Source: Convolutriloba macropyga (lineage: Eukaryota). Taken from it: a stretch of DNA of 64,000 nucleotides. The position numbers were made by a program, and so were the translations under genes. The notes under the pieces were generated by a model. The model had not been told where the DNA came from, made no database searches, and saw nothing but the letters and a program-made list of their open reading frames with translations. Location of the stretch: assembly GCF_964194025.1 (NCBI RefSeq), contig NC_134481.1:32364001-32428000 (forward strand). Direction: 5' to 3'. This document shows positions 929 to 55,000 of the stretch, one piece after another. Numbering within the stretch: the first letter of the stretch is position 1; every line of letters starts with the position of its first letter.

Positions 929-1727
929 ATGCTGATAGTTTTCTACTTTTCACTCAATTTTGGATTAATAATCTCGGAGTACGTTGGTTATAGTCCGCCT
1001 GATCCCAAAGCTGCAGCAGAGAGCTATAAATCGCTCTATGATGATCTTGGAGGGCAATTTGGTCAATTGGGAGAGCCGACAGATGAATATCTTGATAAAA
1101 TTTTTGTTCCCAACTTAAAGTTTAATGAAAATGCAGCATCAATTTGTGTAGTCGAGAGCTTCTTGAGTATCCGCGATGTTGAGAACATTGTAAAAATTCA
1201 ACCAATTGTTAATGAAAATAATCGAGTTATCAGAATGATGTTGATTGGATGCTCTAAGCCGTATCAAAAATCTGGCTATTGGGATTGCCTGAAAGCCGAA
1301 ACATTATGCCAAGATGATCCGCAAATCGTCTACAGCTGGGGACCTAATGCTCCTGATGTTCCAGTTCCCCCTGGCGTTGGGTTTGAAATTGGCTCTAAGT
1401 CGTTGCTGAAATACCTTGTTCTGGAAGTTGATTATGAGAGTGTTGAAAGTTCCCGCGATGGGGGATATCGACCCTCGACGTTTACCGATCAATCTGGCTT
1501 TGCATTAACCATATCCCGGAAACCAATGCATTTCAAGGCGGGCTCTTATGTGTTTATCGGAACTGGTGTATCAACTAACCAAATTGACGTTGCGTGCACT
1601 TTCTCACATGAAAATGCAATATTTCCATTTGGATTTGCAATGATTGGAGATGATTCGATTGAAACAATATCAGCATTCAGAGTTAGAAATGAGAAAGGTG
1701 TTTTGGATTGGGATCCCATTGCACGAG
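929..1727 (+). CDS. PAM: PAM-like exon 1: signal peptide and most of the PHM (copper type II monooxygenase) domain
   Basis: Hydrophobic N-terminus MLIVFYFSLNFGLII; MMLIGC..YWDC..IVYSWGPNAP..PGVGFEIG..KYLVLEVDY; donor G|GTAAAA at 1728. Confidence 0.9.
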
Positions 1728-4700
1728 GTAAAATTTTCCAGTTGCCATTATAAAATTATACCTGATGGATTAATTTGGTAAAACAATGTTTGTTAACATT
1801 TGTTATCTTGAGAGTAGAAAGAAACCAAACGACTCGATAATATTTGTTCTCATATATTGTTCCCACACCTCTCATCAACCACTAACTTTTGAAACCAAAA
1901 ATGTTTTTCCAACTTTTTTTTAAAACTGAAGATTGATAGACTTTTTAAACAAAACAAATTCGCACTGCACTCTACTACAGTTTCAAGATTTGTTGAAACA
2001 AAAGTTTACAGGGAAATAACGATTTTGCTTGATCGGAAAATTTAAAAACCGAGAATTTGTGCTATCATTCTGCTGGTAAGTTGAAGCCGAAATGATCCCC
2101 ATTTTAGTGTCATTAGAATTTGTCAACCATTTAATTTCTGGGCTGTGCTTTTAACAAAATGGGTGGAAATGGTACATTTGATTCAAGTTTGCGTGAAAAA
2201 GTTTATGAAAAGTAGCCAAAATTTTTTAGAAGTCGGCGCAAGCGGAAAAGCTACTTTTAAATTGATCTCAAACGAAGGCAGTGTTTAATTTGGTCCTGTG
2301 TTCTTTTTTATGCGATTTTTCGCTTGATTGATTTTTTGTCTGACCCATTTGACTTTTCGTCCTGGAAAAACAGGATAAACAGCTAGAGCTTGGAGGGCAT
2401 TAAGTTCTCTTAGAGCTCTATGGCTTACTATACTCTAAGAACCCGATTCACCAAATCTGTTTTGAGGAGAGAATTTCATGGCGTGAAGGGCGGTTCTTAA
2501 TTTTAAAAGTTTGACACACCCGCCATCAATGACCCCCTCAACCCTTTCTCCTTTGCAACCATATCCCCCAACGCTTGCCCCCCCCCCATTGCTAGCATCC
2601 CTAATCCCTAGCAAGCTACTACTGAAGCCAACTGCTCGCTAGTCGTTTAAGAGAAATTCGCCCGACGCTAGTCGATTACGTTTATCATCATAGAAAGTGA
2701 AACGAATAACATTACATCTGTTGGCTTTTAACGAATAACATAACATCTGTTGGCGAAACGAATAACATTACATCTGTTGGCTTTTAAGTTTTGATGAAGT
2801 TTAAGTTTCCAGATCTCGGAAACTAGTTTTTTAGCACTTATTTTTTTTAGCAAATTGGAAAATTTGAGCATAATTTCTGAATTAGTGAAAGAAAGAACGT
2901 CAATGAAACCTAAACTGCACCATAATTTGCCGCACAATAACTCGGTCCATCACAAAAACGTTAGATTCATAGCAATTTTCAATTAAAATTTCTAACAATT
3001 ACGGACAATCAAAATCAAGTCTTTTTTATTACCGGTTTGTAACTTATGAGTCAAGATGCGATGATCCGAGAATCCACAAGCCAAATGGGAGCCAAAAACT
3101 TTTGGTTTTCAATCGTGTAATATTTTTTGAAGTACTAAAGCTGGACACCGAAATTACAGAAACCAGCAACTAGGGCCATTGACACAGATAACAAGTAAAG
3201 CAATGCGGATTTAGATATGGTATACAATAAGCTCGAACCCAGTTGAATATTTCGTCACATCTGTTGGTATTTAAGTTTTGTTGAAAGGCTCATGTGGTTT
3301 TTTAAGTTTCCAGATCTCGGCAGTGCCCGAATCTAGAATGCCTGTTTTCCTATATGTCCAATGCTAGAATTTTAAAACTTGTAAAATGCGTGTTCCAAGT
3401 AGGGGTAGCTGGTTCTGCTAACGTCACTTTGAAATTCTAGCTCAGATCGGTTAATGCCAGATTTTCTTTGTGTAATCACAGTCACGTCAGTTTTGCTTGA
3501 AATCGTTCATTTTTTGCTATATGGGAAGTGGAGTCAGTAAATGTTTTGCTACAATTCCGTTGATCAAACCCATCCCTCTCAGATAGTGCCCAAGTTAATT
3601 CATTGCAGATTGGTTTTGGAATTAGATTTTTTTGAAAATTATATTTCTGTTATGTTTTAGATGTCGATATCAAATCCCCTTATTGTTCAAAAAATGTGAA
3701 CTGTTTTATTGCTCTCAAACGAAGTTTCTAGCATATATTAGTCCTGCGTTCATTTTTCTCCTGACCCTTTGTCATCAAAAATGGGAGAACTGGTAAAACC
3801 TGGAGGGCATTAAGTGGCTGAGCAGCTCTGTTAGAGGAGACGTAAATTAGTTATGTGAAGTATGACGCCTCTCAGTAACCACCCTCCACTCCCACTCACC
3901 ATCCCTTGTCCACCCTGCTCCACCTGGCGATACCCCCATCGCTGACACCGCCACTTGAGACCACCACTGCGCTCCCCAAGACTAATGCTAGCATCCTTAA
4001 GCCCCAACTGGCTACTCTCGGAGTCAACAGCTCGTCGATCTTTTGAGAGCAATTCAACAATTTATCTTTTGTTGGTAATGTTTAAAATTTATAAAATGAA
4101 GTTGAATTGGGTTATCAATTTACTTGAGCCACCAAGCAACTAAAAATCTCTTATAAAGACATTTTTTCAAAAACTGCTTGACTCTAAGTACAATTTTAAT
4201 CAACCTTGCACTTGGTCAGTAAAATGACACTGTTCTATTTGCAGATCTTAGCTCACTATTTGTTTTAATTAATGTTTTTTTAAGTTATTAGTTACCTTCT
4301 GTACAGGCCTCTTCTTTGTACTGTTGAAATTCCATAATTCGTAAGTCTTTTTTACTATCCAAATGAAATATATGATTAGAGCAGCTGAAATCTTGATGCT
4401 GTAAAGCTGTTGAATGCTTCATTTTTTGGTCTTGTGGGTCAACCTCCAGAAAAAGCAGCCTCCAAACTAATGTTCAAAGCGTGCTCAGGAAGCAATATCT
4501 GTTACAATGCAATATCGATACAATGCAAGAAAAATGTCAACCTCTTGTAAGCATTTAGTCAAACAATATTGTTAATTCTTCATTTTTATCAGCTGGGAAA
4601 TTGAATTTTGATAAGCTTAAGAATATATCAAGAATATATTAAGAATATATCAAGAATATTTTTTGATAGGATTTTTTTTCTAAATGGTTTTTCCAATCAT

Positions 4701-7700
4701 GCCAAAGTCTATCCCATGTCTAGTTTTCTTTTTAGTTAATGAAAATTCTTTGAATTGTAGGTCTGGACTTCTGCTCTGTTTTTTTTAGTTCGCTTTACTT
4801 TTTGATCACGTTGTTCGTTTTACATAAGTAACGAGTTTCACGTTTGACTTCTCACTTACCTCACTCACTGTTTCAACTGAATGGGTTTTAATTTCCTTCT
4901 TTTTTGAATTACGTAATGTAGAGAATACGATCAAAGTCAAAAGAAAAATCAAGAGAAACAGCATAAACATTTAAAGCCCAGTCATTAAGTCATAGTGCGT
5001 TAGGCTATCAATATTCATTAAAGCGATTGAACTATTATGCTTAAAAGCGTTCAGTTTAGAAGCTGAATTAAGGGTACTTTTTGAATCTAACCAAATATGA
5101 ACATTGTGACAATTAGAATAACTCGGTCAGTTTCTGTCTCTTAATTTTTCTGTTTCACTTCCAATGTGCGTCAAACGGGTCATTGGCGGCTGTTTTTCGG
5201 CTGTTTGAGGGCTATGTTTAACTTTCTGAACTTTTACTTCACAATAATAAATTTTTGTGTTTGTCTGCTTCTAAAACTTACTGACTGTATCCTGGTGACG
5301 TCAACGTTATGTTTCCATAGTTTATAAGTATTTTTATTTTCTGTCGTAGACTAAAGCACAAAAATAATTTTTGCTGTGGCTAAAATGTTATTCGGGGAAT
5401 TGAAGTCCTATTGGTTTTAATTAATCTAGTTGCTAACCTGGTTTTCAAGTATGCGGAATTAATTGGAAGTAAATATTTAGGGAACCCTGGCTGGCCGCAG
5501 GTTTTCTACCCAATGGAGCACGTGTTTAAAATTAGCAATGGAGACATGCTTGCTATCAGATGTTCCAGAAACAACTATTACAGACAAGGCAGTGGCGAAG
5601 ACGACTCGTAAGTCTTGTTTTGCGTGAATTATTGTCTTGGAACCATTTTTCTCGTCTTTGTAGGTTAGATTAATAATATTTCAATGTCAAGTCGCCTTAT
5701 TATTTGCTTTTCACGAGAGAAAATCTTAAGCTAATGCGAGGACAGATTTTTTGTTTGCCCATGCAATTAAAATTGTTCAATTTACACACCAAATATGAAC
5801 TCCAATAATTCAGTGTTACACAGCAGAAACGAGCTTTTCAATTTGTGACAGAACTCTCATCTTATTTGAGAAATGAGGAAATTAATTATTGATATCTTGC
5901 AATGTTGACCGATCACAGCGTCAGAATTTACAGCATCCATTATAGATATTCTTTCCCAACATAAGAATTCTGCAATTGAAATGATCACCAGCAATTATAG
6001 ATGTTAGCTGAGCTGGCTCAAATGAAGATTGTCAGTTTGGCGGTAGCAAGTATAGGTTTTTTCAGGGGAGGAAGCCAATCTAGCCGAATGGGCGTCTAGA
6101 AAAAGTGAGAAATTAAACCGAATATTGGTCATCTTTAAATGCACTGTTTTATACAATGTTACCTCGAAACCTGGTCGAAACGTGGTCGAAACCTCCTCGC
6201 CGACGGGTGGGGGGGGGGGGGGGGGGGTTGGCTGCGCCACGTAGAAATTGAGTGGACGACGACTGATTTAATTCGCTATTTCCTACCTTTTCTTTACTTA
6301 AAAGTTAACTAATCAGATTGTTTGGCCAATGAAATTCAAGCATTTGCTGCGAAAACTCCTATTTTCTCAATCTGCTAAAGGCCACCTTGCCCGAGTTGGT
6401 TACAATTCTAGCTGTTTTTTTAGTTAATAGGTATATTGTTAAGTGTTAAGGTTGTTTAGGGAAGAAAGTCAGTGCTCTTTGACGTTCTTGTTTTTCACAC
6501 TGGTTGAAAACAAAAACACATTCCTCCTGTGCACCCAACCAGGACACCCAAGTCTCTTTTCGTCCATCCCTTGGGACTTCAATGAGCTGGTGGCTGAGAA
6601 GACAAACATTTTGGTGGAAAACTCCTACTCGAAGGACGTCCTGAGATTTGAGAAGCTAATTCAGAGCCAGAAGGAGGAACTGCAGGGTGTCGGGCATTTG
6701 GACGAGGATGCGGGTTAGTTGTAAAATCAACTATGATAATGTTGCCGAGCTATTGAGCTTCAGGCTATCCAAAACTTTGAACTTCCACAGGAAATAACAT
6801 TAAGGCGCAAATCGTACACTTTTGTCGACTAAATTTAATGAAAAATGTCTGTGTTTTTCACTACATAGGTTTTATAGTTATAAGCGTGCGTAGAAAATAG
6901 TGATGGCAAACAAAACTAGTTCTAATTTATTTTGAAACTGGAAACATCTGTCACTATTTTCCACAATTCTGGTTTCTGAGGAAACGTAAACAATAGTAAC
7001 AAGAATTTGCTACTTTTCGACGCTCAACATCACAGTTGTCCATAGGAATATTATTCTAATTTCACGATAGTTAACAACGTTTAAGCTAGACCAACATGAA
7101 AGAAAATATAATTAATGATTTATAACAGAAAACTATCTGGAGATTAGCAGTTTTGCTAGGTTTCATATCACAGCGCATATGAACAATCAAATTCAAAATC
7201 AAGTGTCGGGCTAAGTAAAGAGTTAGCGAATTGAATGCTGAAAATTGTGGACTATGGTTACGTTTATCCGTGAATACGAATTGAATTTTTTTTTTGCATT
7301 TGTCGGGCAATAATTTTGTCAGACATTAGTTGGTTTATGTTTAGTATCAATTAAACACAGCGATTGAGAATCATACATCAGAATTCTTTTTAATAGCCGC
7401 ACAGCGATAGCTGGGGCTATTATTGGCCTTCTCTTGGTTTTTTTACGACTCGAAGAGGAGTATTGGTTTTCTCTCGGTTTTTTTTTTACAGGAAGTATAT
7501 TTGTTCACGCGGCATTTTGACCTAAAAGCGAAAGTGAGAAAATGTCTTGGTGAACAGATTTTCGCTAAGCAAGAGAAGTTTTTTGATCATGCGCTACGTT
7601 TAGTGAATGACTTTTCGACTTTGAAAAGTAGTTTTTGACTGAATTGCACATATAGATAACCGTTTTTAGCCGTTTTTTCGTCTAAGTGGCCCAATTTTTT

Positions 7701-10700
7701 TGCTTTTAATTTAGTGTCTTGTAGAAATAAATTTTTTTCGATGCTATATTGAAATGTCAACCTCGGAAATTGATGCCACAGTGTTTTGCAGAGCCGGAAA
7801 CTGCGTTTCAAATTGAAAATTGGCACTTATTTCGTGATTTTTTAGTTAAATTTTGTCTTTTTTTCTATTAATTTCTTTAGTTTTGGATCTTTTAACCGTC
7901 TTGTGGTCAAAAATCAGTTAATATGGCTGCTTCTTTTTATTAATTTATATACTTAACGCCTCTTTCTATCTCGATGTTTTTTTGCTCTATAAAATTGTAC
8001 ATATGCTAATTCGATTTTGGTAGTTTTTTTTCGATGTTTGTCAGTTTTTTGTTTGTATTTTGGTTTAAATTACTAGAAATAGTCTTTTTGTGCAACAGAA
8101 GGGACTTTAATTTTGTTTCAATAAAACTTCAGTCATTTTTTGGCGTTAAGTTTTTGAAAAACACTTCAAACTTCTTCGTAAATGCAGGCTTAAAAGTTTT
8201 TTAACCTTTTTTTTTCTGCAAAATGGTTTCTTCTTTCATATATTTAAATTCTGCTTTTTCATAATTTTTGTTCTCTTTTCTTGAGGATAGATCTTTATAT
8301 CGGATGACCCTTTATCTGTTCAACGTCTCGAATGCTGAACAATGAAATGTATTCGTTTTTCTTGATTTTTTAAATTTGATTTTTTTAACTTCAAGACTAA
8401 AATCAAGAATGTCTTTGTTTCGGTCTTACTTGCATTGCGTCATTTTTTACATTCTAGTTAGTATCATTCTAGCTTTGTCCTGGCACCTACATTCATTTTT
8501 GTTATAAAGACTTTTTTTGGTTGTTAAAAATTGAATGATTTCAGATTTTTCTTAGATTTTCGTCATTTCTTTGGTTTGCAATTGATTTCATTCAACACAA
8601 AGTAGTACTGAGAGTTTGCTAGCATGTTTTTTTCCAAAATTTCTATTTCTTACTATTTACTGCAACTTTCTTGCGGTCTTGGTAATAATTTAAACGATTT
8701 TTTGCCTTTGAATATTTTTCTGCTGGTTATGTCTTTTCTATGGTTCATTTAATTTTTTGATTTAGTATGAAATCATGTTGTCTAGCATATGTACAACAAG
8801 GAACAGGTCTGTGTTGTTTTTTCTCTTAATCGCAGTTTAGAAGTGTAATTATAGGTGTTTTCTGATTCTTAATTTGAGCTTTCTTTTTTGAAAAGATTTA
8901 ACTTTGTTACTAAGATTATCTGCCGTTTGCTTTCGCGATGTTTTTCAGATTAGAATCATATTTTATTTGAGGTCTTTTGATAACCTTGTCAGTTTTTCAG
9001 ACTATTAGGTTTTTGGCCACCCTAATTATTTTGATTTTTTATTGTTACCAAACGTTTTCAATAGTATAAAATTTTAGAGCAGACCTGGAGAGGTAGTGAG
9101 TTAATGGTTTAATACCAAAGGTAGCGGCTTCGGCTTCATTTACGGTTTTGTAAGTGAAGTTTTGACGCTTCGAGTCGCTTCCGGAATTCCTCCGGCTATG
9201 TTTTTTATTTCGTCGTCATGATTTTTGTTACGACCATATGACGTCACAGCCACTTTTGTTCATTCGTTCATGCAATTTCAACTGAATTGCATGTGTGACG
9301 TCATTTTTCGCTCCTAGTGGAGCGAGTTTCTTTGTTCATGCGCGTGATTGAATTTTTTGTCACACTTGACTTACCTCACTCTCAAAAATGACTTCCTCAA
9401 TTTGAAATTGACTCTTATTTACTTTAATTCAAAGAGATAAGGTCAAATGGGTGTGTGTCACTCTAAATGAAGGTTATTTGAGATCAGCTAATAGAGGCGG
9501 TAAAAACTTATACAGATTTTTAATCAAAATAGAACATATCAACCTTCTATGAAAAGACGATTTTTTTGGTCTGTCTTTTTTACTGTTTTTTTTTTGAGAC
9601 TGCAGATCTACGAAGCTATTGAGGCTATCTTCTGGCAATCTGCCAGCTATGTTTATTGTTGTTCAGTTTTAATGTTTCATGGCGTAATTTTTTTCTCGAT
9701 AACAGTACGGATAATCGATGCTATTTGTTGGAAATCAACGCTATCACTGCGATATTATGTTGAGCGCTTGCAGGTGTTTCATGTTTAAACATTAAAAAGG
9801 TGCAAAAAGTTTGTTTTTGTAACGGCTTTTTTGTTTGCTAATTAATGTTGCTGAAATTATTTTTCATGGTCCGCTCAAAATGTCTTCTTGATTTTTGTCC
9901 ATTCTTAGCAATATTTGAAAGGTACGGCTATATAAATCAGTATCGGTAGCTAAAAAACGTGTTTTTTTTAATTAAAAGGTATAATTAGAAGCACGTGTTG
10001 TTTACTTTTTAGGATTGCAGCTGGAAAGTAGTGACTCGTCCAAAAGTGATAACAAAATAATTTCAAATATCGAAACACCTGATGCGGATGTTGCCAAAGA
10101 CATTAAGAAGGTCATTTTCGACAATCACTGGCCTGCCAACATAGACGGCGCTTTCAACCCAGACGATTATGGAGAAATCACTGGCATTGCAACATTGAGA
10201 AATGGATCCGTGCTTTTTGTTCATCGCTCGGACAGAACGCATACTCACGAATCATTTGACGATTATAACTTCTATGTGGGTAAAAAGCGAAGTACAATCA
10301 ACGAAGACATTATTGTGATGCTCGACTCTTCAAGTGGAAAAGTGTTGAACAAATTTGGGAAAGGGCTTTTGGTTTTGCCTCATGGATTGTACGTTGACCA
10401 CGAGGATTACGTGTATGTGACAGATATCGCAAAGCATCAAGTTATTAAAGTAAGCAAGATTATCTTCTAAATTTTAACCTTATGAAAATCGTCCATGTTC
10501 AAGTTTCTAATGATTTGTTTTTGTGTTCTCTTACTTTAAAACTTTTTGCGCAACTTTTCGTTTTGTAATTCTAAAGAATCTTGTCGTTCGGGACAGTTAT
10601 CAGATGTTCAGTTTATACGTCACACGTCTAAAAGTGTCTTTGTGCATTATCTGAACCTACGTTGTGTTCACAGTTCTCATTGATAAACGTGCGACAACCG

Positions 10701-13700
10701 ATGTTGTACCTGGGAACCTCAAGGGAGCCCGGATCCGACAGTTCTCACTTCTGCCAACCTACAGATGTGGCTGTTTCTACCAAAAAAGGATACATATTTG
10801 TCGCTGATGGTTACTGCAACTCCCGAATTGTCAAGTTTGACAGAAATGGGAAGTACAAAGAAGAGTTCAAGCTCAATGACGAAGAACATACAGGCATTAA
10901 CGACAATGTGGAGGCAAGTAGTGTGACAGTTGCCGATTCTCTCTCGCTGGTCTGTGTTGCTAGTTACACACACGGGTTGGTTCACTGTTTCAATATTGAC
11001 TCTGGCGAAAGCTCTCGGGTGATTCATTCGCCAGCTGTGTTTGGAAGCCACCTGACTGCTGTTACCTATAGTGAGGCTGGAAGTTTGTTCTACGTTTTGG
11101 CTGCGCCTTCATCAGTTAATATCAAGGTCAGGGACTCATTTCAAATAATGCATGAAATTATTAGCTACTGCAGAGATATAGCGTTTATTATTGACACACG
11201 TTGACTTAAGTGACTTTTTCGCACTTCTCTTTAAGTGATCCCAGTTTTTATGCAGGTGTGAGATTAAATATCCTAACCGGCGGGAGGCGAATTGCCATCG
11301 ATTGTCTACACAAATGTTTGAAAAATTGCCCCCGGATTGGCAGATTTACATAAATTTGTTGCATTGCTTCATGATGCTGCAATTTTTCAATAAGAGCTGG
11401 ATCAATTTTAAAACCGAAATTTTGAGTTTTATGAAGATCTCGCTTTTTCAAACGTCTGGAGATTAGAATTCAGTCTTCACCCTATGATCATTCATTTAGG
11501 TAGGCAGTTCATCATGATATCTAATCCAACTACAACCACTCAAAATAGGATCATTTTCAATTGCTCTCCCATCGTGTGTTTTTTTAGAGCAAATCGTCCG
11601 ACTTTCAATCCCAATCTATTGCCGCTGTTTGAATACGCAGCCCAGTCAAAAGTTACCTAATCAATGAAGGCTTTTTGTTTTTATAGCTGTAAGCTGAGCG
11701 GAGCTATATTGCGGTGTCCTTCGTTTTTTACGACTCGAAGAGGATTATTGGTTTTTACGACTCGAAGAGGAGTATTGGTTTTCTCTCGGTCTTTTTACAA
11801 CTCGAAGAGGAGTATTGGTTTTCTCTCGGTTTTTTTTACAGGAAGTAGATTTGTTCACCCGGCATTTTGACCTAAAAGCGAAAGTGAGAAAAGCTGTCTT
11901 GGTGAACAGATTTTCGCTAAGCAAGAGAAGTTTTTTGATCATGCGCTACGTTTAGTGAATGACTTTTCGACTTTGAAAAGTAGTTTTTGACTGAATTGCA
12001 CATATAGATAACCGTTTTTAGCGTTATTTTTTTAATCTAAGTGGCCCAATTTTTTTGCTTTTAATTTGGTTTCTTGTAGAAATATTTTTTAGTTGATACT
12101 ATATTGAAATGTCAACCTCGCAAATTGATGCCACAGTGTTTTGCAGTGCCTGAAAATGCGTTTCAATTTGAAATTTGGCACATATTTCTTGATTTTAGTT
12201 TATTTTTGACTTTTTTCTTAATATCTGCATTTTTGGTGCTTTTAACCATCTTTTTTGTCAAAAATCAGTTAATGTGGCAACTTCTCGTTGATAATTCATA
12301 TACTCAAGGCCTCTTTCTGCCTCGATTTAATTCTGTTTTTGAAAATTGTACATATGCTGATCAGATTTTGGTAGTTTTTTCCGATTTTCGTCAGTTTTTT
12401 GTTTGTATTTTGGTTGTAATTGCTAGAAATAGTCTTTTTGTGCAACATGAGGGACTTTAATTTGGTTTCAATAAAAATTGAATCATTTTTTGGCGTTAAA
12501 GTTTGAAAAAACAGTTAAAACTTTTTCATAAATGCAGTCTTAACCTAAAAGTTCTTTGTCCATTTTTTGCAAAATGTTTCAATGTTTCGTATTTATGAAT
12601 TCTGCCTTTTCCCATTTTTTGTACTCTTCAGGAGGATAGATCTTTGTATCGGATGACTAGTTTTTTTTTCTATGTCTTGAATGCTGAACAATGAAATGTT
12701 TTCGTTTTTCTTGAATTTTTAAAATTGATTTTCAACGTTCAAAAATCAAGAATTTCTTTTTGTTACGGTGTTCCTTGCATTGAGCCCATATTTACATTCT
12801 AGTAAGTATCATTCTAGTTTTGTCCTGGCACCTACATTTATTTTCGGTATATTGATTTTTTTAGTTTAAAAAATGAATGATTTCAGCTTTTTCTTAGATT
12901 TTCGACATTTCTTTGGTTTGCAATTGATTTCTTTCAACATAAGGCAGTACTGAGAGTTTGATAGCAAAATTTCCACTTATGACTAATTACTACAGCTTTC
13001 TTCCGGCCTTGGTATTAATTAAAACGATTTTTTGCCTTTGAATATTCTGCTGCTTATGTCTTTTCTATGATCAATTTTATTTTTGATTTAGTATGAAATC
13101 ACGTTGTCTAGCTTATGTACAAGAAGGAACAGGTGTTGGCTGTTTTTTGTCTTAATCGCAGTGACTAAAAGTGTAATTGTAGGTGTTTTCTGATTCTTAA
13201 ATTTGAGCTTTCTTTTTTGAAAAGATTTAACTTAATTTCTAAGATTATCATCTGCCGTTTGCTTTCGCGATCCTTTTACAGATTAGAATCATGAGTTATT
13301 TGAGGGCTATTGATAACCTTGTCAGCTTTTTCAGACTATCAGGTTTTTGGCCACCTTAATTATTTTGGATTTTATAACGTTACCAAAGGTTTTCAATAAT
13401 ATAAAATTTTGCTGCATTTTATTTCTCTTGTTGACAGTGGTTTAAGTTTCACCAATTTTTAGAGCAGAGCTGGGGAGGTAGTGAGTTAATGGTTTAATAA
13501 AAAAGGTATGGGCTTCTTTTGCAATTACGGTTTTGTTATTTAAGTTCTGACGCTTCGAGTTGCTTCCGGAATTCTTCCGGCTATGTTTTTTTTTCAGGAA
13601 GTACTATTTGTTCAGGCGGCGTTTTGACCTAATAGTGAAAGCGAGTAAAATTGCCGTGTGAACTAATTTTTTCTGAGCGAGAGAAGTTTTTTGTTCATGC

Positions 13701-16700
13701 GCTGCGATCGGTGAATGACTTTTTGACTTTGAAAAGAGTTTTAAAGAGATTGGCGCATATAGATGACAGTTGTTAGCCGTTTTTTTCGTTCATTTGGCCC
13801 AATTTTTTTTGTAATTTGGTTTTTTATTGAAGCAAATTTTGATCGATACCGCATAAAAATGCAGCCATCTGAAATCGATGCCACAATATTTTTGAGAGCT
13901 TGATAACGCGTTTCAAATGCAAAATTGGTCCATTTTTCCGATTTTGTTTGTCAATTTTTGTTTTTTTTTCCATTAATTGCTTCATTTTTGGCTTTTTGAG
14001 CGGACTTTAGTTTATCAAATTAGTACATATGTCAATGTCGTTTTGATAATTCCTGAATTGGATGCCTCTTTCGGACGTGAGGTGTCTTTGTTTTTATAAA
14101 ACTGTACACATACTAACCCAATTTTGGCGGTTTTTGCCAAAGTTCTCATTTTTTTGTGTGTTTTGAGTTTATTTACCATTAAAAGATTTTTGGTTCACCA
14201 TCGTTGCTTTTGGTTTCGTTTTGTTGCCACAACTTTAAAATACAGTGAAAATTTTTACCATATTTTTAACAATTTTTTTTTGCAAATTGTTCTACTGTTT
14301 CGCAATTGCGCTCTTTTCACTTCTTACTGAGACAGGAGGATAGCTATGTAACGTTCATAAGCCTGGATTGCTTATTAACAAACAAAAGCATGTTTGCAAT
14401 TTTTTCATTTTGAGTTTTAATTAGCTTTTCCGATTTAGTTTTGATTTTTCAGAAATTGTCAATTTTTTTTCAATAGTTATCACAATGTATGTTTTCTCCC
14501 TATTCTAGCATGCTCCTTTCTACCATTCTCCTATGAATTATAATTTTATTCGTCCTGCCTGCTTTTTGTAAATTGAAAATAATTGTTTTGAACTAATAGT
14601 GTTTTAAAGTTTTTTTTTGCAATTGATTTTATTCAACATAATATGGTACTGAGGTTTTGCTACCTTTGCTTTTACAAATTTTGAACAGCTCTTTTTTGCG
14701 AATATTCTTATGGCTTGGTTTTGGTAAAATACGAATTTTTGGGTCTGAATATTGTTTTGTCTCTTTAGTCTTTTTCATGATTAATTTCGATTTGATTAAT
14801 TTTTTTGGTCATTGTTTAGTTTTATCGCGTTCATTGTGATTTAAGGCGACAAATATTGTTTACAGTTAAAGCGACAAAGTTTATTTAGTTACCAATTGAT
14901 TTCTGTTTTTTTATTATAAAATAGTGTTTCGATTGAGAGTTTACGGAAGTTGTTAAATTTTGTAACGAATTTCGGCCATTTCTTGCAGTATTCAACGTTT
15001 TCTTTTAAATTGAAATTTTGGGAGCCTAACATGGCTTGATTTCTGCTGCTCGCGTGCTTTGTTGTTTTCAATTGCTTCAAAAGAATTGGATTGTTTCATA
15101 TGCAGGAGGAATGTAATTTTTAGTTTAGTTGGTTTTATGGGCTATCTTCATTTTTGACGGATTTTTGTTGTTGTTAGTAGTCACTTTATTAGAAAACAGT
15201 TGATTTCAAAGGGAAATCTTTCATGAAGACGACTCTTCGAGTTGTTTCCGGATTTCTTCTGGCTATGTTCTTGATTTTTTTTTACCGGAAGTGCTATTTG
15301 TTCCGGCGGCGTTTTGATGTAATATTGAATGTGATTAATACTGCCATGTGAGCTAACTTTTTCTGAGCGAGAATGTTTTTTTGTTCAAGCATTGCGGTCA
15401 GTGAGAGACTTTTTGACTTCGAAAAGTTTCTGAGAGATAGGCCCACATAGATGACAGTTTTTCGCTGTGTTTTCGTCCATTTGGCCCCTTTTTTGTTTTA
15501 TTGTAACTTGGTTTTTCTGTAGAAGTAAAATTTCTCATGAATATGCAGACACCTTAAATTGTTACCACAATGTTTCGAAGAGCTTAATAATGCGTTTCAA
15601 GCGCAAAATTGGCCCATATTTCTACAATTTAATTGTCAATTTTTTGCTTTCATCGATTTCTTCATTTTTGGCTCTTTGAGCAGACTTTCTTTAACCAAAT
15701 TTCTAAATATGTGAACGTCTTTTTGATAACTCCTGAATTGGATTCTTCTTTTTGATGTGAGGTGTTTTGTTTTTATAAAACTGCACACTTACTAATCCGA
15801 TTTTGGCGGTTTTTGTCAAAGTTTTCTAAGTTTTTTGTTTGTACTTTGAGTTTATTTGCCATATAAAGTCTCTTGGTCACCATCGGTGTCTTTGTTTTCA
15901 TTTTGTTGCTAATATAATTGTTTTTGCCGATAAATGTCTAAATTCTTTGAATATTTTTAACGTATTTTGAAGATTTTTTCAATTCTTACTAAGACAGGAA
16001 GATGCCTATGCAATTTTCGTAGACCGTGATTGCTTAACAACAAAAAATCCATGTTTTTTGCACTAATTTTTTTTAGTTTGATTTTTTATTAGAGCGTCGA
16101 ATTTAGCTTTTTTGGTTTTTCAGAAATTGCGAAATACTTTTTTATTCTTTTTCACAATATACGTATTTTCCATGTTCTATTATGTTTCTTTCTGACATCA
16201 TAAGATCTATTGTTTTTATGCGCCCTGCCTTTGAAAATTGAAAATCATCGATTTCAACTAATGATAAATTGTTTTTTTTTTTGTTTTTTTTTTTAAAGTT
16301 TTTTTGTTTGCAATTGATTTTCTTTTACATACTATAGCAGTGAGGTTTTGCTAGCTTCACTTTTACAAATTTTTAAGAATACTCTTTTGCTGCAAATATT
16401 CTTAGGGCTTGGTTTTCGTAGCATACCAATTTTTTGCGTTTGATTATAGCTCAGTCTCTTTGCCTTTTTCATGATTAATTTTGATTAATTTTTTGGTCAT
16501 TGTTTAGTTTTATTGCGTCCATTGTGACTTAAAGCGACAACTAATGTTTATATTTAAAGCGACAAAGTTTGTTTAGTTATCAATTGATTACTGTTCTTAT
16601 TTTGTAAAATAGGGTTTCGGTTGAGAAAACTACCGGAAATTGATCAATTTTGTAACAATTTTAGGCCATTTCTTGCAGTATTCAAATGTTTCTTCCAAAG

Positions 16701-18409
16701 TAAAGCTTTGGGAGCCTGACAAGTTTTGCTTTTTGCCGCCCGCGTGCTTTGGTTTGAGTTGTCCACAAAACACAAAAATTTGGCTTATAGTACATAGGAG
16801 TAATGTAATTTTTTTAGTTCAGCTGGTTTTATTGGCTATCTTCAGTTTTTGACTGAATTTTTTGTTTTTAGTAGTTGTTTTAGTAGGAACCAATTGATTT
16901 AAAAGTAATTCTTTCCCGAAGACGACTCTTCGAGTTGTTTCCGGAATGCTTCGGGCTATGTTTTTTTGTTTCGTCGTCTGACGCTCTTTTTCGTTTTACA
17001 TTTGTTCACACGGCAAAGCTGAAAATGTCAAATTTTCTGATTGGCTTCTTCCTCTCACTGACGGCTTTTGCGCGTAACTTCATTTCGCACTCTCTCTCTC
17101 TATCACAAGTTTTTGCGTGATTGGATTTTGATCATACGTGACTTACCTCAATCAATTAAATGACTTTTACACTTTAAAACTTAAGTTTAATTTGAATTAA
17201 ATTAGGGTCAAAGGAACTCATCTGTGTAATAAAGGTTCCTAATGAAAGGACTTCTGCACAATGAGTTTTAACAAGCTTTATTAATTTATAGCTGATGTTT
17301 TACTTTTCGATACATTTTTCAACTTAGTTTGTGATATGAATTTAGTGGCAACCATATTGGTCGTGCTGGTCTTTTTATGTGCAATTTTTCCTGCTACCAA
17401 TTTTTGTCTGACAGATTTTTGTTGACTTTTGGGCTTGAGAAGTGGGATAAACTGGTAAATCTCGGGGTATTAAGTTTCTGTGCAGTTCTCTAAAAATGAA
17501 TTACACTAAATATGGGGTACACCGGAACTGCAGAGGAGAAAAATTGTATATTTAGTCCTCAACACCCCCCCCCCGCCTCGCCAACCCTACACCAATACCT
17601 GGATATCATCATAAGAAAGTGAAACTAACTCTGACGAAGAAAAGTTGGGGAGACCGTTTTTTAGCTGGAACATTTTTTTCTGGAAAATTCAAGAATAAGG
17701 AAAGTATTGAGCTGTGTGAGTGTGGTGAAAAAGTTGCTCTCCGATTTACTTTGCTCTCTGGTCGTTTTAGACGCAGGCATTCTCAGTGGACATCAATTCG
17801 GAACAGGCAATGCAAGCTTTCTCACCTGGGAAGGAAACAGGATTTATGTCAGTGACGTACGATATCGTTGCGTCACCAGAGAACCAATATATCTACGTTT
17901 GCGATCAAAGCCAAAACAAAATTTACAAATTCATCCAAATGGAAAAGAGTTTCCTCGCCCGTGGAGTGTCGCAAGGAACTTCTTCGAAATTAGTGGGCGA
18001 AGGCAAGGAAAGCTCATGGAAAAGTGGGGGAAAGTTTGACGAAAGTTTCTATTCCTCGCTGGCGATTTTGTTACTAATTGCTATTCCTTTGACTATTGTA
18101 GTTACAGCCACTATTGTATCAAGATCACGAGCTAAAAGTCATCCCATGGCTGATCACCGTAAGTTCGTGTCCTGGTCATCAAAGAAAGGATACGACAAGG
18201 CATCGATCCACGAGAAACGAAAGTCGAAGCAATCGGGAAGCGGTGGAGGAAGCGGAAGCAGTAACGGATTGGTCAACGGTGTTACAGGGATGTTGGGTGG
18301 AGGTGGAAAGCGAGGGTTCCACCGATTGCCAAGTGTGGACTCGGATCGTGAGGCCGATCGGCTAACGGACTCAGAGGCGGAGGAGTTTACGAGTCAGCAA
18401 GTTATGTAA
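929..18409 (+). CDS. PAM: PAM-like protein (PHM + PAL + TM + cytosolic tail), 6 coding exons: join(929..1727,5481..5607,6460..6713,10013..10449,10674..11126,17771..18409), 902 aa; predicted catalytically dead
   Basis: Exon lengths 799+127+254+437+453+639 = 2709 nt = 903 codons including TAA. All five introns are GT..AG with matching phases (1,2,1,0,0). Motifs GVGFEIG, PQVFYP, GDMLAIRC, LPHGL, HFCQPTDVAV, DGYCNSRIVKF and DIVAS are collinear with vertebrate PAM. Confidence 0.92.
2260..2677 (+). mobile_element. DINE-1/Helentron-like non-autonomous element, family A
   Basis: 5' aattgatctcaaacgaag, core ctgacccatttgacttttcgtcc..gggcattaagt, C-rich centre, 3' inverted gtttaagagaaatt then stem-loop CGACgctaGTCG. 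Confidence 0.6.
2701..2785. repeat. Tandem repeat, three copies of 27-29 bp (aacgaataacattacatctgttggc)
   Basis: Directly visible. Confidence 0.9.
3708..4054 (+). mobile_element. Family A element copy
   Basis: attgctctcaaac ... tttgagagcaatt inverted ends, same core and C-rich centre. Confidence 0.6.
4617..4660. repeat. Tandem repeat, about four copies of 11 bp (t(t/c)aagaatata)
   Basis: Directly visible. Confidence 0.85.
5481..5607 (+). CDS. PAM: PAM-like exon 2 (PHM C-terminal subdomain)
   Basis: Acceptor tttag at 5476-5480; GNPGWPQVFYPMEHVFKISNGDMLAIRC resembles rat NPQLPQAFYPVEHPVDVTFGDILAARC; donor GTAAGT at 5608. Confidence 0.9.
6460..6713 (+). CDS. PAM: PAM-like exon 3 (end of PHM and linker)
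   Basis: Acceptor tttag ending 6459; ESQCSLTFLFF..FLLCT..SLFSSIP resembles DEMCNLYIMYY..FMTCT..DMFRTIP; donor GTTAGT at 6714. Confidence 0.87.
7392..9652 (+). mobile_element. Composite Helentron-like element in PAM intron 3: host (family B) carrying a 1.76-kb family C element at 7444-9203
   Basis: 5' hairpin aatagccgcacagcgatagctggggctatt; 3' ggctatcttCTGGCAatcTGCCAGctatgtt; insert bounded by acgactcgaagag and cttcgagtcg plus CCGGAattccTCCGG. Confidence 0.62.
10013..10449 (+). CDS. PAM: PAM-like exon 4 (start of PAL NHL-repeat propeller)
   Basis: Acceptor tttttag ending 10012; LFVHRSDR, KFGKGLLVLPHGLYVD..YVTDIAKHQVIK; donor GTAAGC at 10450. Confidence 0.92.
10674..11126 (+). CDS. PAM: PAM-like exon 5 (PAL core)
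   Basis: Acceptor cacag ending 10673; EPGSDSSHFCQPTDVAV..IFVADGYCNSRIVKFDRNGKY; donor GTCAGG at 11127. Confidence 0.9.
11682..17290 (+). mobile_element. Composite Helentron-like element in PAM intron 5 containing three head-to-tail units of about 1.7 kb (about 11839-13590, 13595-15270, 15285-16965)
   Basis: Each unit starts ggaagt..tttgttc..cggc(a/g)ttttga and ends cttcgagttg.ttccgg..ggctatgtt; the first unit closely matches 7490-9203. Confidence 0.7.
11725..11830 (+). repeat. Triplicated family C 5' end (ttttac(g/a)actcgaagagga(g/t)tattggtttt)
   Basis: Three copies at about 11726, 11753 and 11793. Confidence 0.85.
17771..18409 (+). CDS. PAM: PAM-like exon 6 (last PAL blade, transmembrane helix, cytosolic tail)
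   Basis: Acceptor ttttag ending 17770; TYDIVASPENQYIYVCD..IYKF; TM SLAILLLIAIPLTIVVTATIV; tail KRGFHRLPSVDSD..SEAEEF; stop TAA 18407-18409. Confidence 0.9.
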   Translation, partial: TQAFSVDINSEQAMQAFSPGKETGFMSVTYDIVASPENQYIYVCDQSQNKIYKFIQMEKSFLARGVSQGTSSKLVGEGKESSWKSGGKFDESFYSSLAILLLIAIPLTIVVTATIVSRSRAKSHPMADHRKFVSWSSKKGYDKASIHEKRKSKQSGSGGGSGSSNGLVNGVTGMLGGGGKRGFHRLPSVDSDREADRLTDSEAEEFTSQQVM

Positions 18410-51029: not shown

Positions 51030-52012
51030 GGTTGAGCCACTTCAAACCAGTAACAAAAGCCATCAGAGAGCAAGAAATGACTTTTGAAACTGAAAAAACA
51101 TAAAATTTGTCAAAACTCAAAAATGGTCAAAACTGAAAAATTTTACAAGTTGGGACCGAAATTTTGTACAGCCCCGAATTTTGGAAGGGAAAACCTGAGC
51201 AACCCGAAGTTATGGCTCACGGTTAGGTTTACCTCTACGCTATTCATGGACCCAACGAACGTTATCGCATCAGATCCAACAGGGTGGCTATTAGCACTTA
51301 TATGGTGCAAAATTGGCATTTTTTGATATTTTGTTATTTATTCTTAAATTTTTGAAGTGGCATGTTTTATGATATTTTAGGTGATCATTAAAGATCAATT
51401 ACCGAACATTTGAGAAATTTAGCGCCACCTAATAACTATCCGTGCTTATGTAAAAAAAAATTGTGCAGTAATTTGACATTTACTATGTAAACAATGACCT
51501 AAATCACCTACTTGATTAACCAATCAGAAACAAGTAGCGATGATGTAATAAATGATAAGTATTTGATTTTTTGCTTTACCAGAATTGTTTGAACAGTGAA
51601 ACCGAATTCTACTTAGATCCACTAGAAGCTGTTATACAGAGCAGTTGGCTCTCAGATTAGACTAAAATTTGATTGTTCTGCAACTTTAGTTTTTTTTGCT
51701 AAGTTTTGCTAGATCTTAATAGTTTGCGAGTTTTAAGTTAGTTGAGCTTAGTTGATGAGAAGTTATCATCATTACTAACACTGGCTGAAGCTTTACGAAA
51801 TTCATCACGAGATTTAACATAGATTATCACTAAGGATTTTCTTAACTTCAATCAACAAAATTAAATTTATAGTCCTTTAATACGTCCGAGCGACTTATAG
51901 TTTCGAAGAGATTGTTAGTCAATCGAACCCTATGAAGAACCAGACCTGTGTAAAACTCGAGAACCAGGCTGTGATATATCGGTTCCGCTGAGATTCTTGA
52001 GCCGCCGCAACA
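51030..52012 (+). repeat. 5' LTR of the BEL/Pao element (about 0.98 kb)
   Basis: 51030-51545 matches 58039-58557 and about 51550-52012 matches about 59630-60096; ends CGCAACA; 5' TG end is degenerate. Confidence 0.82.
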
Positions 52013-52090
52013 TTGATCCGCCGACCCAGACAACAACACGAACAGCAACGAATCTTCGATTCAATCTGGTGGACCAGAACGAAATCCTCA

Positions 52091-55000
52091 CGATGTCTGG
52101 AAAGAGCCCTAATATACATTGGAAAACGACTGACTACAAGATGTCAGGCCAATTCAGTAAGCCCGAAAATGAGCAAGCTGAATTGCTCAAAACGTTTGAC
52201 GGACATCTAGCAGATGTGAAAAGTCATTTGGCTCAGAAGAAAACAGTGTCCGCAGAAAGAGCATATCAATGGTTCTTTGAGACTTACCATGTTTTGGAGA
52301 AAACCAAACAGCAACAGAGACAACTCCTGAAGCCAATGTACTTGGAAAATTTCGATGGCGACACCAAAAGAAATTTGAGCGGATAGAAGAAGACACAAAT
52401 GGTTGGTTGAACAAATACCAAAACTTAGAAAAAGTGAAGGATATTGCTACGGCGTTCTTAACCAACGGAAAGACACTTTGCGGCTCTACACAAGGTTGGA
52501 AAACATGCGATTCAATTTATAGAGAAGCAGAGAAATTGGAAGAGGAGTTGGGATCAGATTTTTTAGACAACTCCGCAGGCAAGCTTTCAGCTGTAAACTG
52601 GAACAGCTAGTAAAGAAACTAGATTCAGATCAAGCAGCACTCAAACTAATCGTGAGATCAGATATTGCTACGGATTGGTTGACGAATTTAAGTGAGAATA
52701 AAGATGACCATAAAGGCATGCTGAAACAGTACCAGCAAACCGCAGAGAGTGGAAATCAAACATCATTGGTGTCATCCACATCGGCTGTTGACAAAGAACC
52801 AAACGAAACTGTAAATGATACAGGAATAGGAGCAATAGCAAACGCTGAAGAGATTGTCGAGTTCTCGTCCAGGCATTCTGCAACACATGGAAGCCAAAAA
52901 GAACCCAGTATTGACAGCTCACGATCACCGAGAAGACGACAGATTGACGAAATGGAGGTTGAAATCCTAAGATCTAAGAAAGAAACAGAGCAACAACTAC
53001 GAAAGCGGCAGTTTGAGTTAGAGCAGGAGCGTGAGGAAGTGGGACTACGGCAACGAGAGGAACAACAAGAACAAGAATTACGTCTAAAGTTAAAACAACA
53101 AGAAGACGAGCTACATTTGCGTCAACATAAATGAGTGCTCGAAAACGGAAGAAAGAAATCTGAAGCCAACAAAGAGCAAAGAGGCATAGAAATTGAACTA
53201 AAAATACGGAGAGACATTGTCACGGGTAGACGACATAGAATGTGTTGGATCAAGACGTTATCTAGAAAGAACTGCAGGCTGGGCAAATTCAGTGGCCCAA
53301 CAGTCTGGCCCTAAACGACCGCTATCTCCTAATGTTATGATCAACCCTCCTAAGAATGTCACACAGTACAAAGATGACAAAGCGCCCACCCAAAAACTAC
53401 CCCGTTGTTCCAGCCGGGCTCGGAACTTTTCTCAACGCAACTACAAGATTCGAGTATTCTCAAGAAACCTGAAATCCCTAAATCAATTAGGGTGACAGAA
53501 CCACAGACGCTGTTGCCCAATACAACATTCCAGCAACAAGGACGTTCAGCTTTCCAATTATATTGATGCAACGCATCGATGGAAAGCCAAAACCAAACAA
53601 TAGTGAGCCAAGCTACCCCACAAGTAATTTACCAACCGAGTGGTGACCCAAGAAGATTATCAAAACTCAAGTTAACGGAAATCTCAGGAGAGCCGCTGCA
53701 GTGGCTCGAGTGTGCAGAACTTTTCGATGTGATTGTGCATCAAAAGCGGCTAAACGATACTGAGAAGTTGCAGTTTCTGAAGAGTATCGGAGGGAGTTCT
53801 GACTTCAGCAACCATAAAACTTTCCTTTCAGGTTAAAAAAAACAGTGGCTACGACACCTACAGGATCATCGACTACTAGCAGCTAACTTGATTGTTTTCA
53901 AAGACTGGTTAGAATCCACTGCTCTCATACATGAAGACTTGTTAGTCCACACAAACCCTAAGTTCCAAAACCGTGAGAAACCAAAAACAAGTACTTTCGA
54001 ATCCAACGATGATTCTACCAAAAAAAATTCAGAATGCCCATTCAAAGATGATCATCACGTCATTTGGGTTTGTGAGACATTCAAATCAATGAAGCTGAAC
54101 GAACGACGAGATCATGTTCAGATTTCCAGACTGTGTTTCAATTGCTTGAAACCTGGCCATCAGTTGAAGGATTGCAGAAGTAGAACCGAAGCGTGCCCAA
54201 TTGCGGACGACAACACTACAAGCTTTTGCACAGCAACTTCTCAAAGAAGAAGGCTAAAACAGGCGCCTCAGGTGCTACGAAAGCAATAGCAACAAACATC
54301 GCACAAGGAGGACTCCCTGTAGTGCAGTTTAAGCTAGTGAATGGGGATCTACGCCTGAGCCTGCTGTCAATGTGTGATACAGGATCCTCAATCTCATTCG
54401 TGGGCAAGTCAATTGTATCTGCAATGCACTTGCAAGGCCGAAAAGCGTCTCTGTCAGTAGCTGGCCTCCACGGATCACAAAATGTCAAGACTGAAAAAGT
54501 TCCGATAGCGGTTTCATAACATAAGAGGTCTCGACTATTGACAACAGTGCAATTCTATGTCATTGAAGAACTGAAATAGGGTGACCAGACTGTAGATCCG
54601 TAAGTGTTGAAAGATCGCTACCCACATCCAAAGAACTTGCCAAATCAGAGCTACAATCTAAGCGAAGTTCAATGAATTTTCGGAGAAAACTGCTGCGACA
54701 TCCATCACCCATTAGAATTCCAAAACTGCACCGTAGACGGTGAAAACAAAAATAGGCCGGGCCTTAAGTGGTCCCCTGCCAACCTCAGTATCAGAGGACA
54801 GGTCAGCAAGGCAGTTGTGTAAATGGTAGGACATCGAATGCTACTCCTCAAACTGTGAGGTCACCGGTCATTCGAAAAACGAACAGAGAGCAATCAAAAC
54901 ATAGGAGCAAACAACTCGATTCACCGGTGAAAGATACGAAGTTGGACTTCGATGGCGAGAAGAGGAAGTGAAGTTACCATGTAACTCCTACTCGGCTATG

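What the first reader, a model, noticed from the sequence alone, without database searches (positions are those of the whole stretch)
10013..17945. PAL lyase domain is also disabled: a doubly dead bifunctional amidating enzyme
Seen: H585 (LPHGL), Y654 (DGYCN), R533 (HRSD), D787 and both PAL disulfide pairs (HFC/GYC and VCV/HCF) are retained. However VPHSLAL->EASSVTV (H690 lost, about 10911-10931), CVADRENGR->CVASYTHGL (R706 lost, about 10953-10979) and MPHDIVAS->VTYDIVAS (H786->Y, about 17852-17875). Established: H585/H690/H786 hold the catalytic Zn and Y654/R706 form the catalytic pair. PAMs with one inactive domain are known, such as schistosome PAM with an inactive PAL; I do not know of a full-length membrane PAM lacking both activities. 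Inference: a PAM paralogue repurposed as a lumenal peptide or cargo receptor, granule scaffold, or regulator of active PAM.
Basis: partly seen in the sequence, partly recalled or inferred. Interest (0 to 1): 0.82.

Follow-up and report, generated by a model that had tools for sequence, protein, structure and literature searches.

The report
Conserved catalytically dead PAM in acoels
The acoel worm Convolutriloba macropyga keeps an intact membrane protein built like the peptide-amidating enzyme PAM, with the catalytic residues of both enzyme domains gone. Related acoels conserve it more tightly than their working lyase, so it must do something other than catalysis.

Summary
The window holds an intact six-exon gene on the + strand (929-18409, 905 aa, all introns GT-AG). 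RefSeq annotates it as XP_075262205.1, "PAM-like", in Convolutriloba macropyga.

**Lyase (PAL) domain, exons 4-6.**
- It aligns to rat PAL and is modelled as the same six-bladed propeller (pLDDT 92.5; 3FVZ Z 43.1).
- Kept: R533, H585, Y654, D787 and both disulfides.
- Lost: H690 to S, D705 to S, R706 to Y, H786 to Y.

**PHM domain.** All six copper ligands are also gone.

**No rescue.** No alternative PAM-like exon exists anywhere in the 64 kb.

**Orthologs.** Symsagittifera roscoffensis (XP_063718805.1) and a third acoel (an uninterrupted, apparently spliced transcript contig) share the H690, D705 and R706 losses. They vary at H585, Y654 and H786.

**Selection.** Synonymous sites are saturated, yet the dead PAL domain stays 71-82% identical. 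The intact stand-alone PAL of the same species pairs is only 54-61% identical.

**Rest of the genome.** It has separate intact PHM and PAL genes, and no other gene with a PAM-type membrane anchor and tail.

**Reading.** This is a selectively maintained pseudoenzyme. Most likely it is a non-catalytic trafficking or binding protein of the secretory pathway. That function is inferred, not shown. I found no paper describing it. The same scan also noted the dead PHM domain and the conserved tail on this window.

The parts
929..1727 (+). Exon 1: start codon, signal peptide and most of the PHM-like domain. H107 to I, H108 to R, H172 to D, H242 to I, H244 to D.
   Evidence: Gene model. Alignment to rat PHM chains and to PAMs. 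79% identical to the S. roscoffensis exon.
5481..5607 (+). Exon 2: PHM-like domain, continued.
   Evidence: GT-AG borders, in frame. Conserved block in orthologous loci.
6451..6713 (+). Exon 3: end of the PHM-like domain (M314 to Q) and the linker. RefSeq uses the acceptor 9 nt downstream (6460).
10013..10449 (+). Exon 4: linker end and PAL blades 1-2. R533 kept (10225-10227), H585 kept (10381-10383).
   Evidence: alignment to 3FVZ/5WM0.
10674..11126 (+). Exon 5: PAL blades 3-5. Y654 kept (10812-10814). H690 to S (10917-10919), D705 to S, R706 to Y (10965-10967), N708 to H. Both disulfide pairs kept.
17771..18049 (+). Exon 6, first part: PAL blade 6 (H786 to Y at 17858-17860, D787 kept) and the stalk.
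18050..18124 (+). Exon 6: transmembrane helix, 100% identical in the three acoel orthologs.
18125..18409 (+). Exon 6: cytosolic tail with the PAM-type GF-x-R...SD...DSE-x-EE(F/Y) motif, then the stop codon (18407-18409). It is the only such tail in the genome.
   Evidence: (last 37 aa 97% identical).

Best explanation
**What it is.** This is the Convolutriloba macropyga copy of a PAM-architecture gene shared by at least three to five acoel lineages. The layout is signal peptide, PHM-like domain, linker, PAL-like six-bladed propeller, one transmembrane helix, and a PAM-type cytosolic tail.

**Shown:**
- The gene is intact.
- Its PAL domain keeps the fold, both disulfides and the Ca-site Asp, but lacks Zn ligands H690 and H786 and the substrate-binding R706.
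- Its PHM domain lacks all copper ligands.
- The losses at H690, D705 and R706 are shared by all orthologs. H585, Y654 and H786 drift between species.
- The protein is under strong purifying selection and changes about three times more slowly than the intact stand-alone lyase of the same animals.
- The genome carries separate, intact PHM and PAL genes.

**Inferred:**
- Amidation is done by those monofunctional enzymes.
- This protein has kept, or taken over, the non-catalytic work of PAM. Its lumenal domains would act as a binding or scaffolding module in the secretory or ciliary membrane system. The conserved helix and tail would route it and perhaps signal.
- The former active-site face is remodelled to a fixed S-Y-x-H-G-L motif. 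That suggests a conserved binding surface rather than decay.
For: - **Intact gene.** 905-aa ORF, five GT-AG introns. Identical to RefSeq XP_075262205.1 apart from a 9-nt acceptor choice.
- **Residue states.** Alignment to rat PAL/PAM chains and the table of catalytic positions.
- **Fold.** AF2 model of the window's own PAL domain: pLDDT 92.5. Best match 3FVZ: Z 43.1, rmsd 2.2 over 308 residues. The ortholog model agrees.
- **PHM ligands lost.**
- **No alternative exon.** tblastn and a profile scan of all six frames of the window.
- **Orthologs.** S. roscoffensis XP_063718805.1, reproduced exactly from genomic exons. A 2821-nt contig with an uninterrupted 901-codon ORF from SRR19327882.
- **Selection.** pS 0.78-0.91 (saturated) against dN 0.10-0.25; TM helix 100% identical.
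- **Slower than the enzyme, identity.** Dead PAL domain 82/71/70% identical, against intact PAL 61/54/46% for the same species pairs.
- **Slower than the enzyme, tree paths.** 0.20 against 0.71, and 0.39 against 1.23.
- **Intact PHM and PAL elsewhere.**
- **Tail unique in the genome.**
- **Precedent.** PAM1/Met314Ile, which lacks monooxygenase activity but keeps PAL activity, restores proANP storage in mouse atrial myocytes (bioRxiv 10.1101/2020.03.08.982777).
- **Amidation in acoels.** Amidated peptides were detected by MS in at least one of three acoel species analysed, a set that includes C. macropyga (PMC6188537).
Against: - I found no RNA evidence for C. macropyga. The four runs that were laid are genomic DNA, and no listed holder is on record as RNA.
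- That SRR19327882 is an RNA run is inferred from the intron-free contig, not from its record.
- The function itself is untested: no localisation, partner or phenotype is known.
- Work on cilia favours a need for amidating activity rather than for the PAM protein (PMC6529398). A ciliary role for a dead PAM is therefore not implied.
- The tree does not resolve whether this gene is the direct descendant of ancestral PAM or a duplicate.
Confidence: 0.6

Rival explanations
1. The lumenal domains escort or anchor the soluble or separately encoded PHM and PAL enzymes. A pseudoenzyme would pair with its active relatives and bring them to granules or cilia through the PAM tail.
For: The only PAM-type TM/tail in the genome sits on the dead protein, while the active enzymes are separate genes. 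The dead domains are very conserved.
Against: There is no evidence of any interaction. At least one PHM paralogue has its own N-terminal hydrophobic anchor. I did not run a complex prediction, because neighbourhood or family membership alone is a weak reason.
Confidence: 0.15
2. The remodelled propeller face (S/Q690, S705, Y706, H708, L710, fixed in all orthologs) is a new ligand-binding site. The protein would be a receptor or sorting receptor for peptides or other lumenal cargo, not a general scaffold.
For: 13 of the 56 positions conserved in active PALs are changed in all three orthologs, mostly to the same residue. The segment holding the former H690 site is among the most conserved.
Against: Only three sequences were compared. 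The model's coordinates could not be inspected. The PHM substrate-binding residues R240, N316 and Y318 are also replaced (their roles are from my own knowledge), so canonical peptidyl-Gly binding is unlikely.
Confidence: 0.15
3. The PAL domain is still a lyase or another hydrolase, using a rebuilt metal site (for example H585 with Y786 and H708).
For: H585, Y654, R533 and D787 remain in the window's protein. H708 and Y706 are conserved in all three orthologs.
Against: The third ortholog has Q585, F654, Q690 and Y786, so none of the three Zn histidines and no catalytic Tyr. It is still conserved overall. H585, Y654, H690 and H786 are invariant in all 15 intact PAL domains compared.
Confidence: 0.06
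4. It is a decaying relic (pseudogene) or an annotation or assembly artefact.
For: No RNA run of this species was found.
Against: Full-length ORFs with conserved splice sites exist in three species and exon 1 in two further assemblies, while synonymous sites are saturated. A third species has an uninterrupted transcript-like contig. Four DNA runs agree with the assembly.
Confidence: 0.02

Closest known systems
Bifunctional membrane PAM (rat/human PAM-1; PHM EC 1.14.17.3 plus PAL EC 4.3.2.5)
   Same: Same order of signal peptide, PHM, linker, PAL, TM and tail. Pfam PF01082, PF03712 and PF01436 all hit (on the orthologs). The PAL fold matches 3FVZ at Z 43. The disulfides, D787 and the acidic tail motif are kept.
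   Different: All six Cu ligands, two of three Zn ligands (all three in one ortholog) and R706 are replaced. No catalysis is expected.
Engineered inactive PAM (PAM1/Met314Ile) with a non-catalytic role in atrial granule formation in mouse
   Same: A membrane PAM that cannot hydroxylate still supports cargo storage and granule formation. This is the best functional precedent.
   Different: That protein is a laboratory point mutant that keeps PAL activity. The acoel protein is a natural one with both sites lost and fixed for a long time.
Split amidation systems (Drosophila PHM with PAL1/PAL2; C. elegans pghm-1 and pgal-1 beside pamn-1)
   Same: Acoels also have monofunctional, catalytically intact PHM and PAL genes.
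   Different: According to the review read here, insects lack integral-membrane PAM. The nematode PAM is regarded as active (my own knowledge). Here the bifunctional gene is kept but is inactive.
NHL-repeat propellers that bind ligands without catalysis (TRIM71, Brat, Thin)
   Same: Same six-bladed fold class; these are the next-best structural matches at Z about 32. They show that such propellers serve as binding modules.
   Different: They are cytosolic RNA- or protein-binding domains, only 15-20% identical, and not lumenal.

Membership tests
PAM (bifunctional peptidylglycine alpha-amidating monooxygenase) | Domain order: signal peptide, PHM, linker, PAL, TM helix, cytosolic tail | tested here: met
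   Gene model; full-length alignment; Pfam hits on the orthologs.
PAM (bifunctional peptidylglycine alpha-amidating monooxygenase) | PHM copper ligands H107, H108, H172 (CuH) and H242, H244, M314 (CuM) | tested here: not met
   Replaced by I, R, D, I, D, Q, identically in the three orthologs.
PAM (bifunctional peptidylglycine alpha-amidating monooxygenase) | PAL zinc ligands H585, H690, H786 | tested here: not met
   The window has H, S, Y. S. roscoffensis has H, S, H. The third acoel has Q, Q, Y.
PAM (bifunctional peptidylglycine alpha-amidating monooxygenase) | PAL catalytic Tyr654 and substrate-binding Arg706 (plus Arg533) | tested here: not met
   Y654 and R533 are kept in the window. R706 is Tyr in all orthologs, and Y654 is Phe in the third acoel.
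PAM (bifunctional peptidylglycine alpha-amidating monooxygenase) | PAL six-bladed beta-propeller with Cys634-655 and Cys702-713 and the Ca-site Asp787 | tested here: met
   AF2 pLDDT 92.5; 3FVZ Z 43.1, rmsd 2.2; Cys and Asp columns.
PAM (bifunctional peptidylglycine alpha-amidating monooxygenase) | Hydroxylase and lyase activity on peptidyl-Gly and peptidyl-alpha-hydroxyglycine | not testable with these tools
   Needs enzyme assays and metal analysis.
Pseudoenzyme (inactive homologue kept by selection) | Catalytic residues lost while the sequence stays under purifying selection across species | tested here: met
   dN 0.10-0.25 with saturated synonymous sites. The PAL domain is 71-82% identical, against 54-61% for the intact PAL of the same species pairs. 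Tree path lengths agree.
Pseudoenzyme (inactive homologue kept by selection) | Expressed as mRNA or protein | tested here: inconclusive
   An uninterrupted 2821-nt transcript-like contig exists in a related acoel, and RefSeq models exist in two species. No RNA run was found for this species.

The most novel reading that the evidence does not exclude
Acoels have split PAM's two jobs between genes. Monofunctional PHM and PAL do the chemistry. The ancestral membrane PAM survives as a pure non-catalytic organiser, whose remodelled and conserved former active-site face binds cargo or the active enzymes. It would then be a natural separation-of-function allele for the disputed non-catalytic roles of PAM in granule and cilium biology.
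Probability: 0.25. Interest if true: 0.8.

Novelty: new variant of a known kind. Interest (0 to 1): 0.66.

Why it matters
PAM is the only known enzyme that amidates peptides. It also has debated non-enzymatic roles in secretory-granule formation and ciliogenesis. [quoted passage not shown]

Acoels appear to carry such a protein naturally. Both active sites are gone, the anchor and tail are kept, and it is conserved more tightly than the working lyase. Knocking it down in an acoel would test the non-catalytic role directly.

It also shows that a 'PAM-like' database name does not imply amidating capacity. That matters when neuropeptide processing is inferred from genomes.

Tried and rejected
1. 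**Expression in this species.** The four runs that could be laid are genomic DNA: contigs cover the introns at even depth and show no splice joints. A second search again gave no run on record as RNA.
2. **dN/dS as a number.** Synonymous differences are saturated (pS above 0.75), so only dN and pS are reported.
3. **Origin of the gene.** Two maximum-likelihood trees of PAL domains leave the dead clade, the acoel PAL clade and the other animal PAM/PAL unresolved. Both acoel stems are long, at 1.8-2.6 changes per site. No donor or order of events is claimed.
4. **Wider orthologs.**
   - The exon-5 search of 1.84 billion representatives found only one close fragment.
   - The full-length search found only ordinary PAMs at 26-32% identity. 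The acoel orthologs are hidden under short cluster representatives.
   - Hofstenia, nemertodermatids and Xenoturbella could not be examined.
tblastn found none within about 15 kb.
6. **A held paper stating the roles of H585, H690, H786, Y654 and R706.** None was found. Their roles rest on my knowledge of the rat PAL structure paper and on their invariance in 15 intact domains.
7. **Zn-site geometry.** This could not be inspected, because the structure tool returns no coordinates.
8. **Complex prediction.** None was run.

Full report
**Organism and locus.** The window is G000:C15:32364001-32428000 of a 1,175,981,408-base assembly. That length equals the 1,175.98 Mb reported for the chromosomal genome of the acoel Convolutriloba macropyga (PMC13650328). 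The protein database holds the gene as XP_075262205.1, 'peptidyl-glycine alpha-amidating monooxygenase-like [Convolutriloba macropyga]'.

**The observation.** HMMER alignments of the three PAL exons to the rat chains 3FVZ and 5WM0 fix the rat numbering.
- Kept: R533, H585, Y654, D787, and the cysteine pairs 634/655 and 702/713.
- Changed: H690 is Ser, D705 Ser, R706 Tyr, N708 His, R710 Leu, and H786 Tyr.

In an alignment with 15 catalytically intact PAL domains (Trichoplax, Nematostella, arthropods, annelid, echinoderms, chordates and the acoel stand-alone PALs), H585, Y654, H690 and H786 are invariant and R706 is 93% conserved. The changes therefore hit the positions that define the enzyme. 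The roles of these residues (Zn ligands, catalytic Tyr, substrate Arg) come from my knowledge of the rat PAL structure work. I could not read that paper here.

**Gene model.** The gene has six exons: 929-1727, 5481-5607, 6451-6713, 10013-10449, 10674-11126 and 17771-18409. They join in frame through five GT-AG introns into a 905-codon ORF without stops. The RefSeq protein is identical except that it uses an acceptor 9 nt further on in exon 3. The architecture is signal peptide, PHM-like domain, linker, PAL-like domain, stalk, one TM helix (18050-18124) and a cytosolic tail.

The PHM-like domain has lost all six copper ligands: H107I, H108R, H172D, H242I, H244D and M314Q. R240, N316 and Y318 are also replaced. 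'Doubly dead' is correct.

**No rescue by other exons.** tblastn with three active PAMs and a profile HMM run with all filters off against every open stretch of all six frames of the 64 kb found only these six exons. The next-best hit has E above 2.

**Fold.** The window's own PAL domain (given as XP residues 430-749 with an 18-sequence alignment) is modelled with pLDDT 92.5 and pTM 0.92. It superposes on rat PAL 3FVZ with Z 43.1 and rmsd 2.2 Å over 308 of 320 residues. That is well above the NHL propellers of TRIM71, Thin and Brat at Z about 32. The S. roscoffensis ortholog gives the same result. The propeller is therefore intact and only its active site is altered. Coordinates are not returned, so the geometry of the former Zn site could not be inspected.

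**Orthologs.** Exon-based searches found relatives only in acoel-type data.
- Symsagittifera roscoffensis XP_063718805.1 (904 aa). Its sequence is reproduced exactly by splicing seven genomic exons of locus L017.
- A 901-aa protein on a 2821-nt contig from SRR19327882 with one uninterrupted ORF. The genomic copies all have introns, so this is most simply a spliced mRNA.
- Exon-1 copies in two more assemblies.

All three full-length proteins share the six PHM substitutions and S/Q690, S705, Y706, H708 and L710. The remaining catalytic positions drift. H585 reads H/H/Q, Y654 reads Y/Y/F and H786 reads Y/H/Y (order: C. macropyga, S. roscoffensis, third acoel). That is the pattern expected if catalysis was lost before these species split and those positions are now free.

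**Selection.** Between the three coding sequences, synonymous sites are saturated (pS 0.78-0.91) while dN is 0.10-0.25. The PAL domain is 81% and 71% identical, the PHM domain 84% and 72%, the tail 88% and 74%, and the TM helix 100%.

The intact stand-alone PAL of the same samples gives a comparison. It is P0209 from the S. roscoffensis sample and P0210 from SRR19327882, matched against the chromosome-3 PAL of C. macropyga.

| Species pair | Dead PAL domain, identity | Intact PAL, identity | Dead clade, tree path | Intact PAL, tree path |
|---|---|---|---|---|
| C. macropyga – S. roscoffensis | 82% | 61% | 0.20 | 0.71 |
| C. macropyga – third acoel | 71% | 54% | 0.39 | 1.23 |

Identities are and tree paths. 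The dead domain is thus more constrained than the enzyme. The stem of the dead clade is long (1.8-2.2 changes per site), which fits a burst of change followed by stasis. Of the 56 positions at least 85% conserved in intact PALs, 34 are kept in all three dead proteins and 13 are changed in all three, mostly to the same new residue.

**The rest of the amidation machinery.** In the same genome PAL-like sequence occurs at only three loci. These are this gene, an intact single-exon-core PAL on chromosome 3 (RefSeq 'pgal-1' isoforms) and a second intact PAL on chromosome 16.

The acoel stand-alone PALs keep R533, H585, Y654, H690, R706, H786 and D787 in all six sequences examined. They have lost the Cys702-713 pair. 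The chromosome-16 copy, not among those six, reads Gly at D787. Several PHM genes keep HH, H, HxH and M (from the loci).

A search with the TM helix plus tail finds only this gene. So there is no active bifunctional PAM here.

Amidated peptides were confirmed by mass spectrometry in at least one of three acoel species, a set that includes C. macropyga (PMC6188537). This fits amidation by the separate enzymes.

**How it most likely works.** What is shown is an intact, conserved type I membrane protein with two inactivated enzyme folds and a PAM-type tail. [quoted passage not shown]

The precedent is experimental. PAM1/Met314Ile, which lacks monooxygenase activity, restores proANP storage in PAM-deficient mouse atrial myocytes, and the authors conclude that PAM has a non-catalytic role in early cargo trafficking (bioRxiv 10.1101/2020.03.08.982777).

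The tail motif GF-x-R...SD...DSE-x-EE(F/Y) aligns with rat and amphioxus PAM, and in other systems the tail carries the routing signals (PMC6529398). For cilia the same review favours a need for amidating activity, so I do not claim a ciliary role. It also says that inactive mutants are needed to settle the question, and this gene supplies one naturally.

Narrower versions cannot be separated with the present data. They are an escort of the soluble enzymes and a new ligand site on the remodelled face.

**What is known and what is new.** The family, the fold and the idea of non-catalytic PAM functions are all known, and the gene itself is in RefSeq under a generic name. In the held literature I found no description of a natural membrane PAM with both sites lost, nor of the acoel arrangement. 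I class it as a new variant of a known kind.

**Limits.** There is no RNA evidence for this species. Only three full-length orthologs were compared. The origin is unresolved. The function is untested.

Noticed in passing
window 7340-9667 (intron 3); related pieces near 11690-11990, 13500-13770, 15200-15350 and 16900-17020: A very high-copy repeat. Contig word depth reaches 10^4 to 10^6, against about 30-60 for the flanking unique DNA, with many alternative joints at about 7440/9201. Open stretches at about 7400-7640 and 11690-11990 share the same peptide-like strings, so copies of one element fill the introns of this gene.
   Followed up: partly
window about 52000-57500, + strand: Open frames that look like gag zinc-knuckle, protease, reverse-transcriptase and integrase pieces, broken by stops and frame changes, in a GC-richer block (0.43-0.44). 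This is probably a decayed LTR retrotransposon.
   Followed up: no
window 6708-6790: A linked set of five heterozygous differences in three of the four DNA runs. 6708 A>G lies in exon 3 and would change Asp to Gly in the linker (HLDEDAG). The others are intronic.
   Followed up: partly
window about 10893/10894, compared with L016 9629/10122 and L017 9626/10122: The S. roscoffensis ortholog has an extra intron of about 490 nt splitting the exon that is continuous in C. macropyga (exon 5, between ...EEHTG and INDNVE...). The gene has seven exons there against six here.
   Followed up: partly
window 6451 versus 6460: Two in-frame AG acceptors lie 9 nt apart at the start of exon 3. RefSeq uses the downstream one, which removes Leu-Phe-Arg. 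Which one is used could not be tested without RNA.
   Followed up: partly
L002 (G000:C3:65.26 Mb), L003/L023 (C16:6.99-7.00 Mb), and P0208-P0212: The acoel monofunctional PALs compared (chromosome-3 copy and P0208-P0212) keep every catalytic residue. They have replaced both cysteines of the Cys702-713 disulfide (Phe and Ile/Val/Met). This is the reverse of the dead PAM, which keeps the disulfide and loses the catalytic residues.
   Followed up: partly
L008/L011 and L009/L014 (G000:C1:1.33 Mb and 4.89 Mb); L010/L012 (C2197 and C10): Near-identical duplicated PHM-like loci, some next to a proline-run repeat, show a recent expansion of PHM genes in this genome. Their integrity was not checked.
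   Followed up: no
run X6 (2016, same organism, multi-species study): It holds 78% of the exon-1 words although only 159 million letters of contigs are kept. Its type is not recorded. If it is a transcriptome, it would be expression evidence for this species.
   Followed up: no
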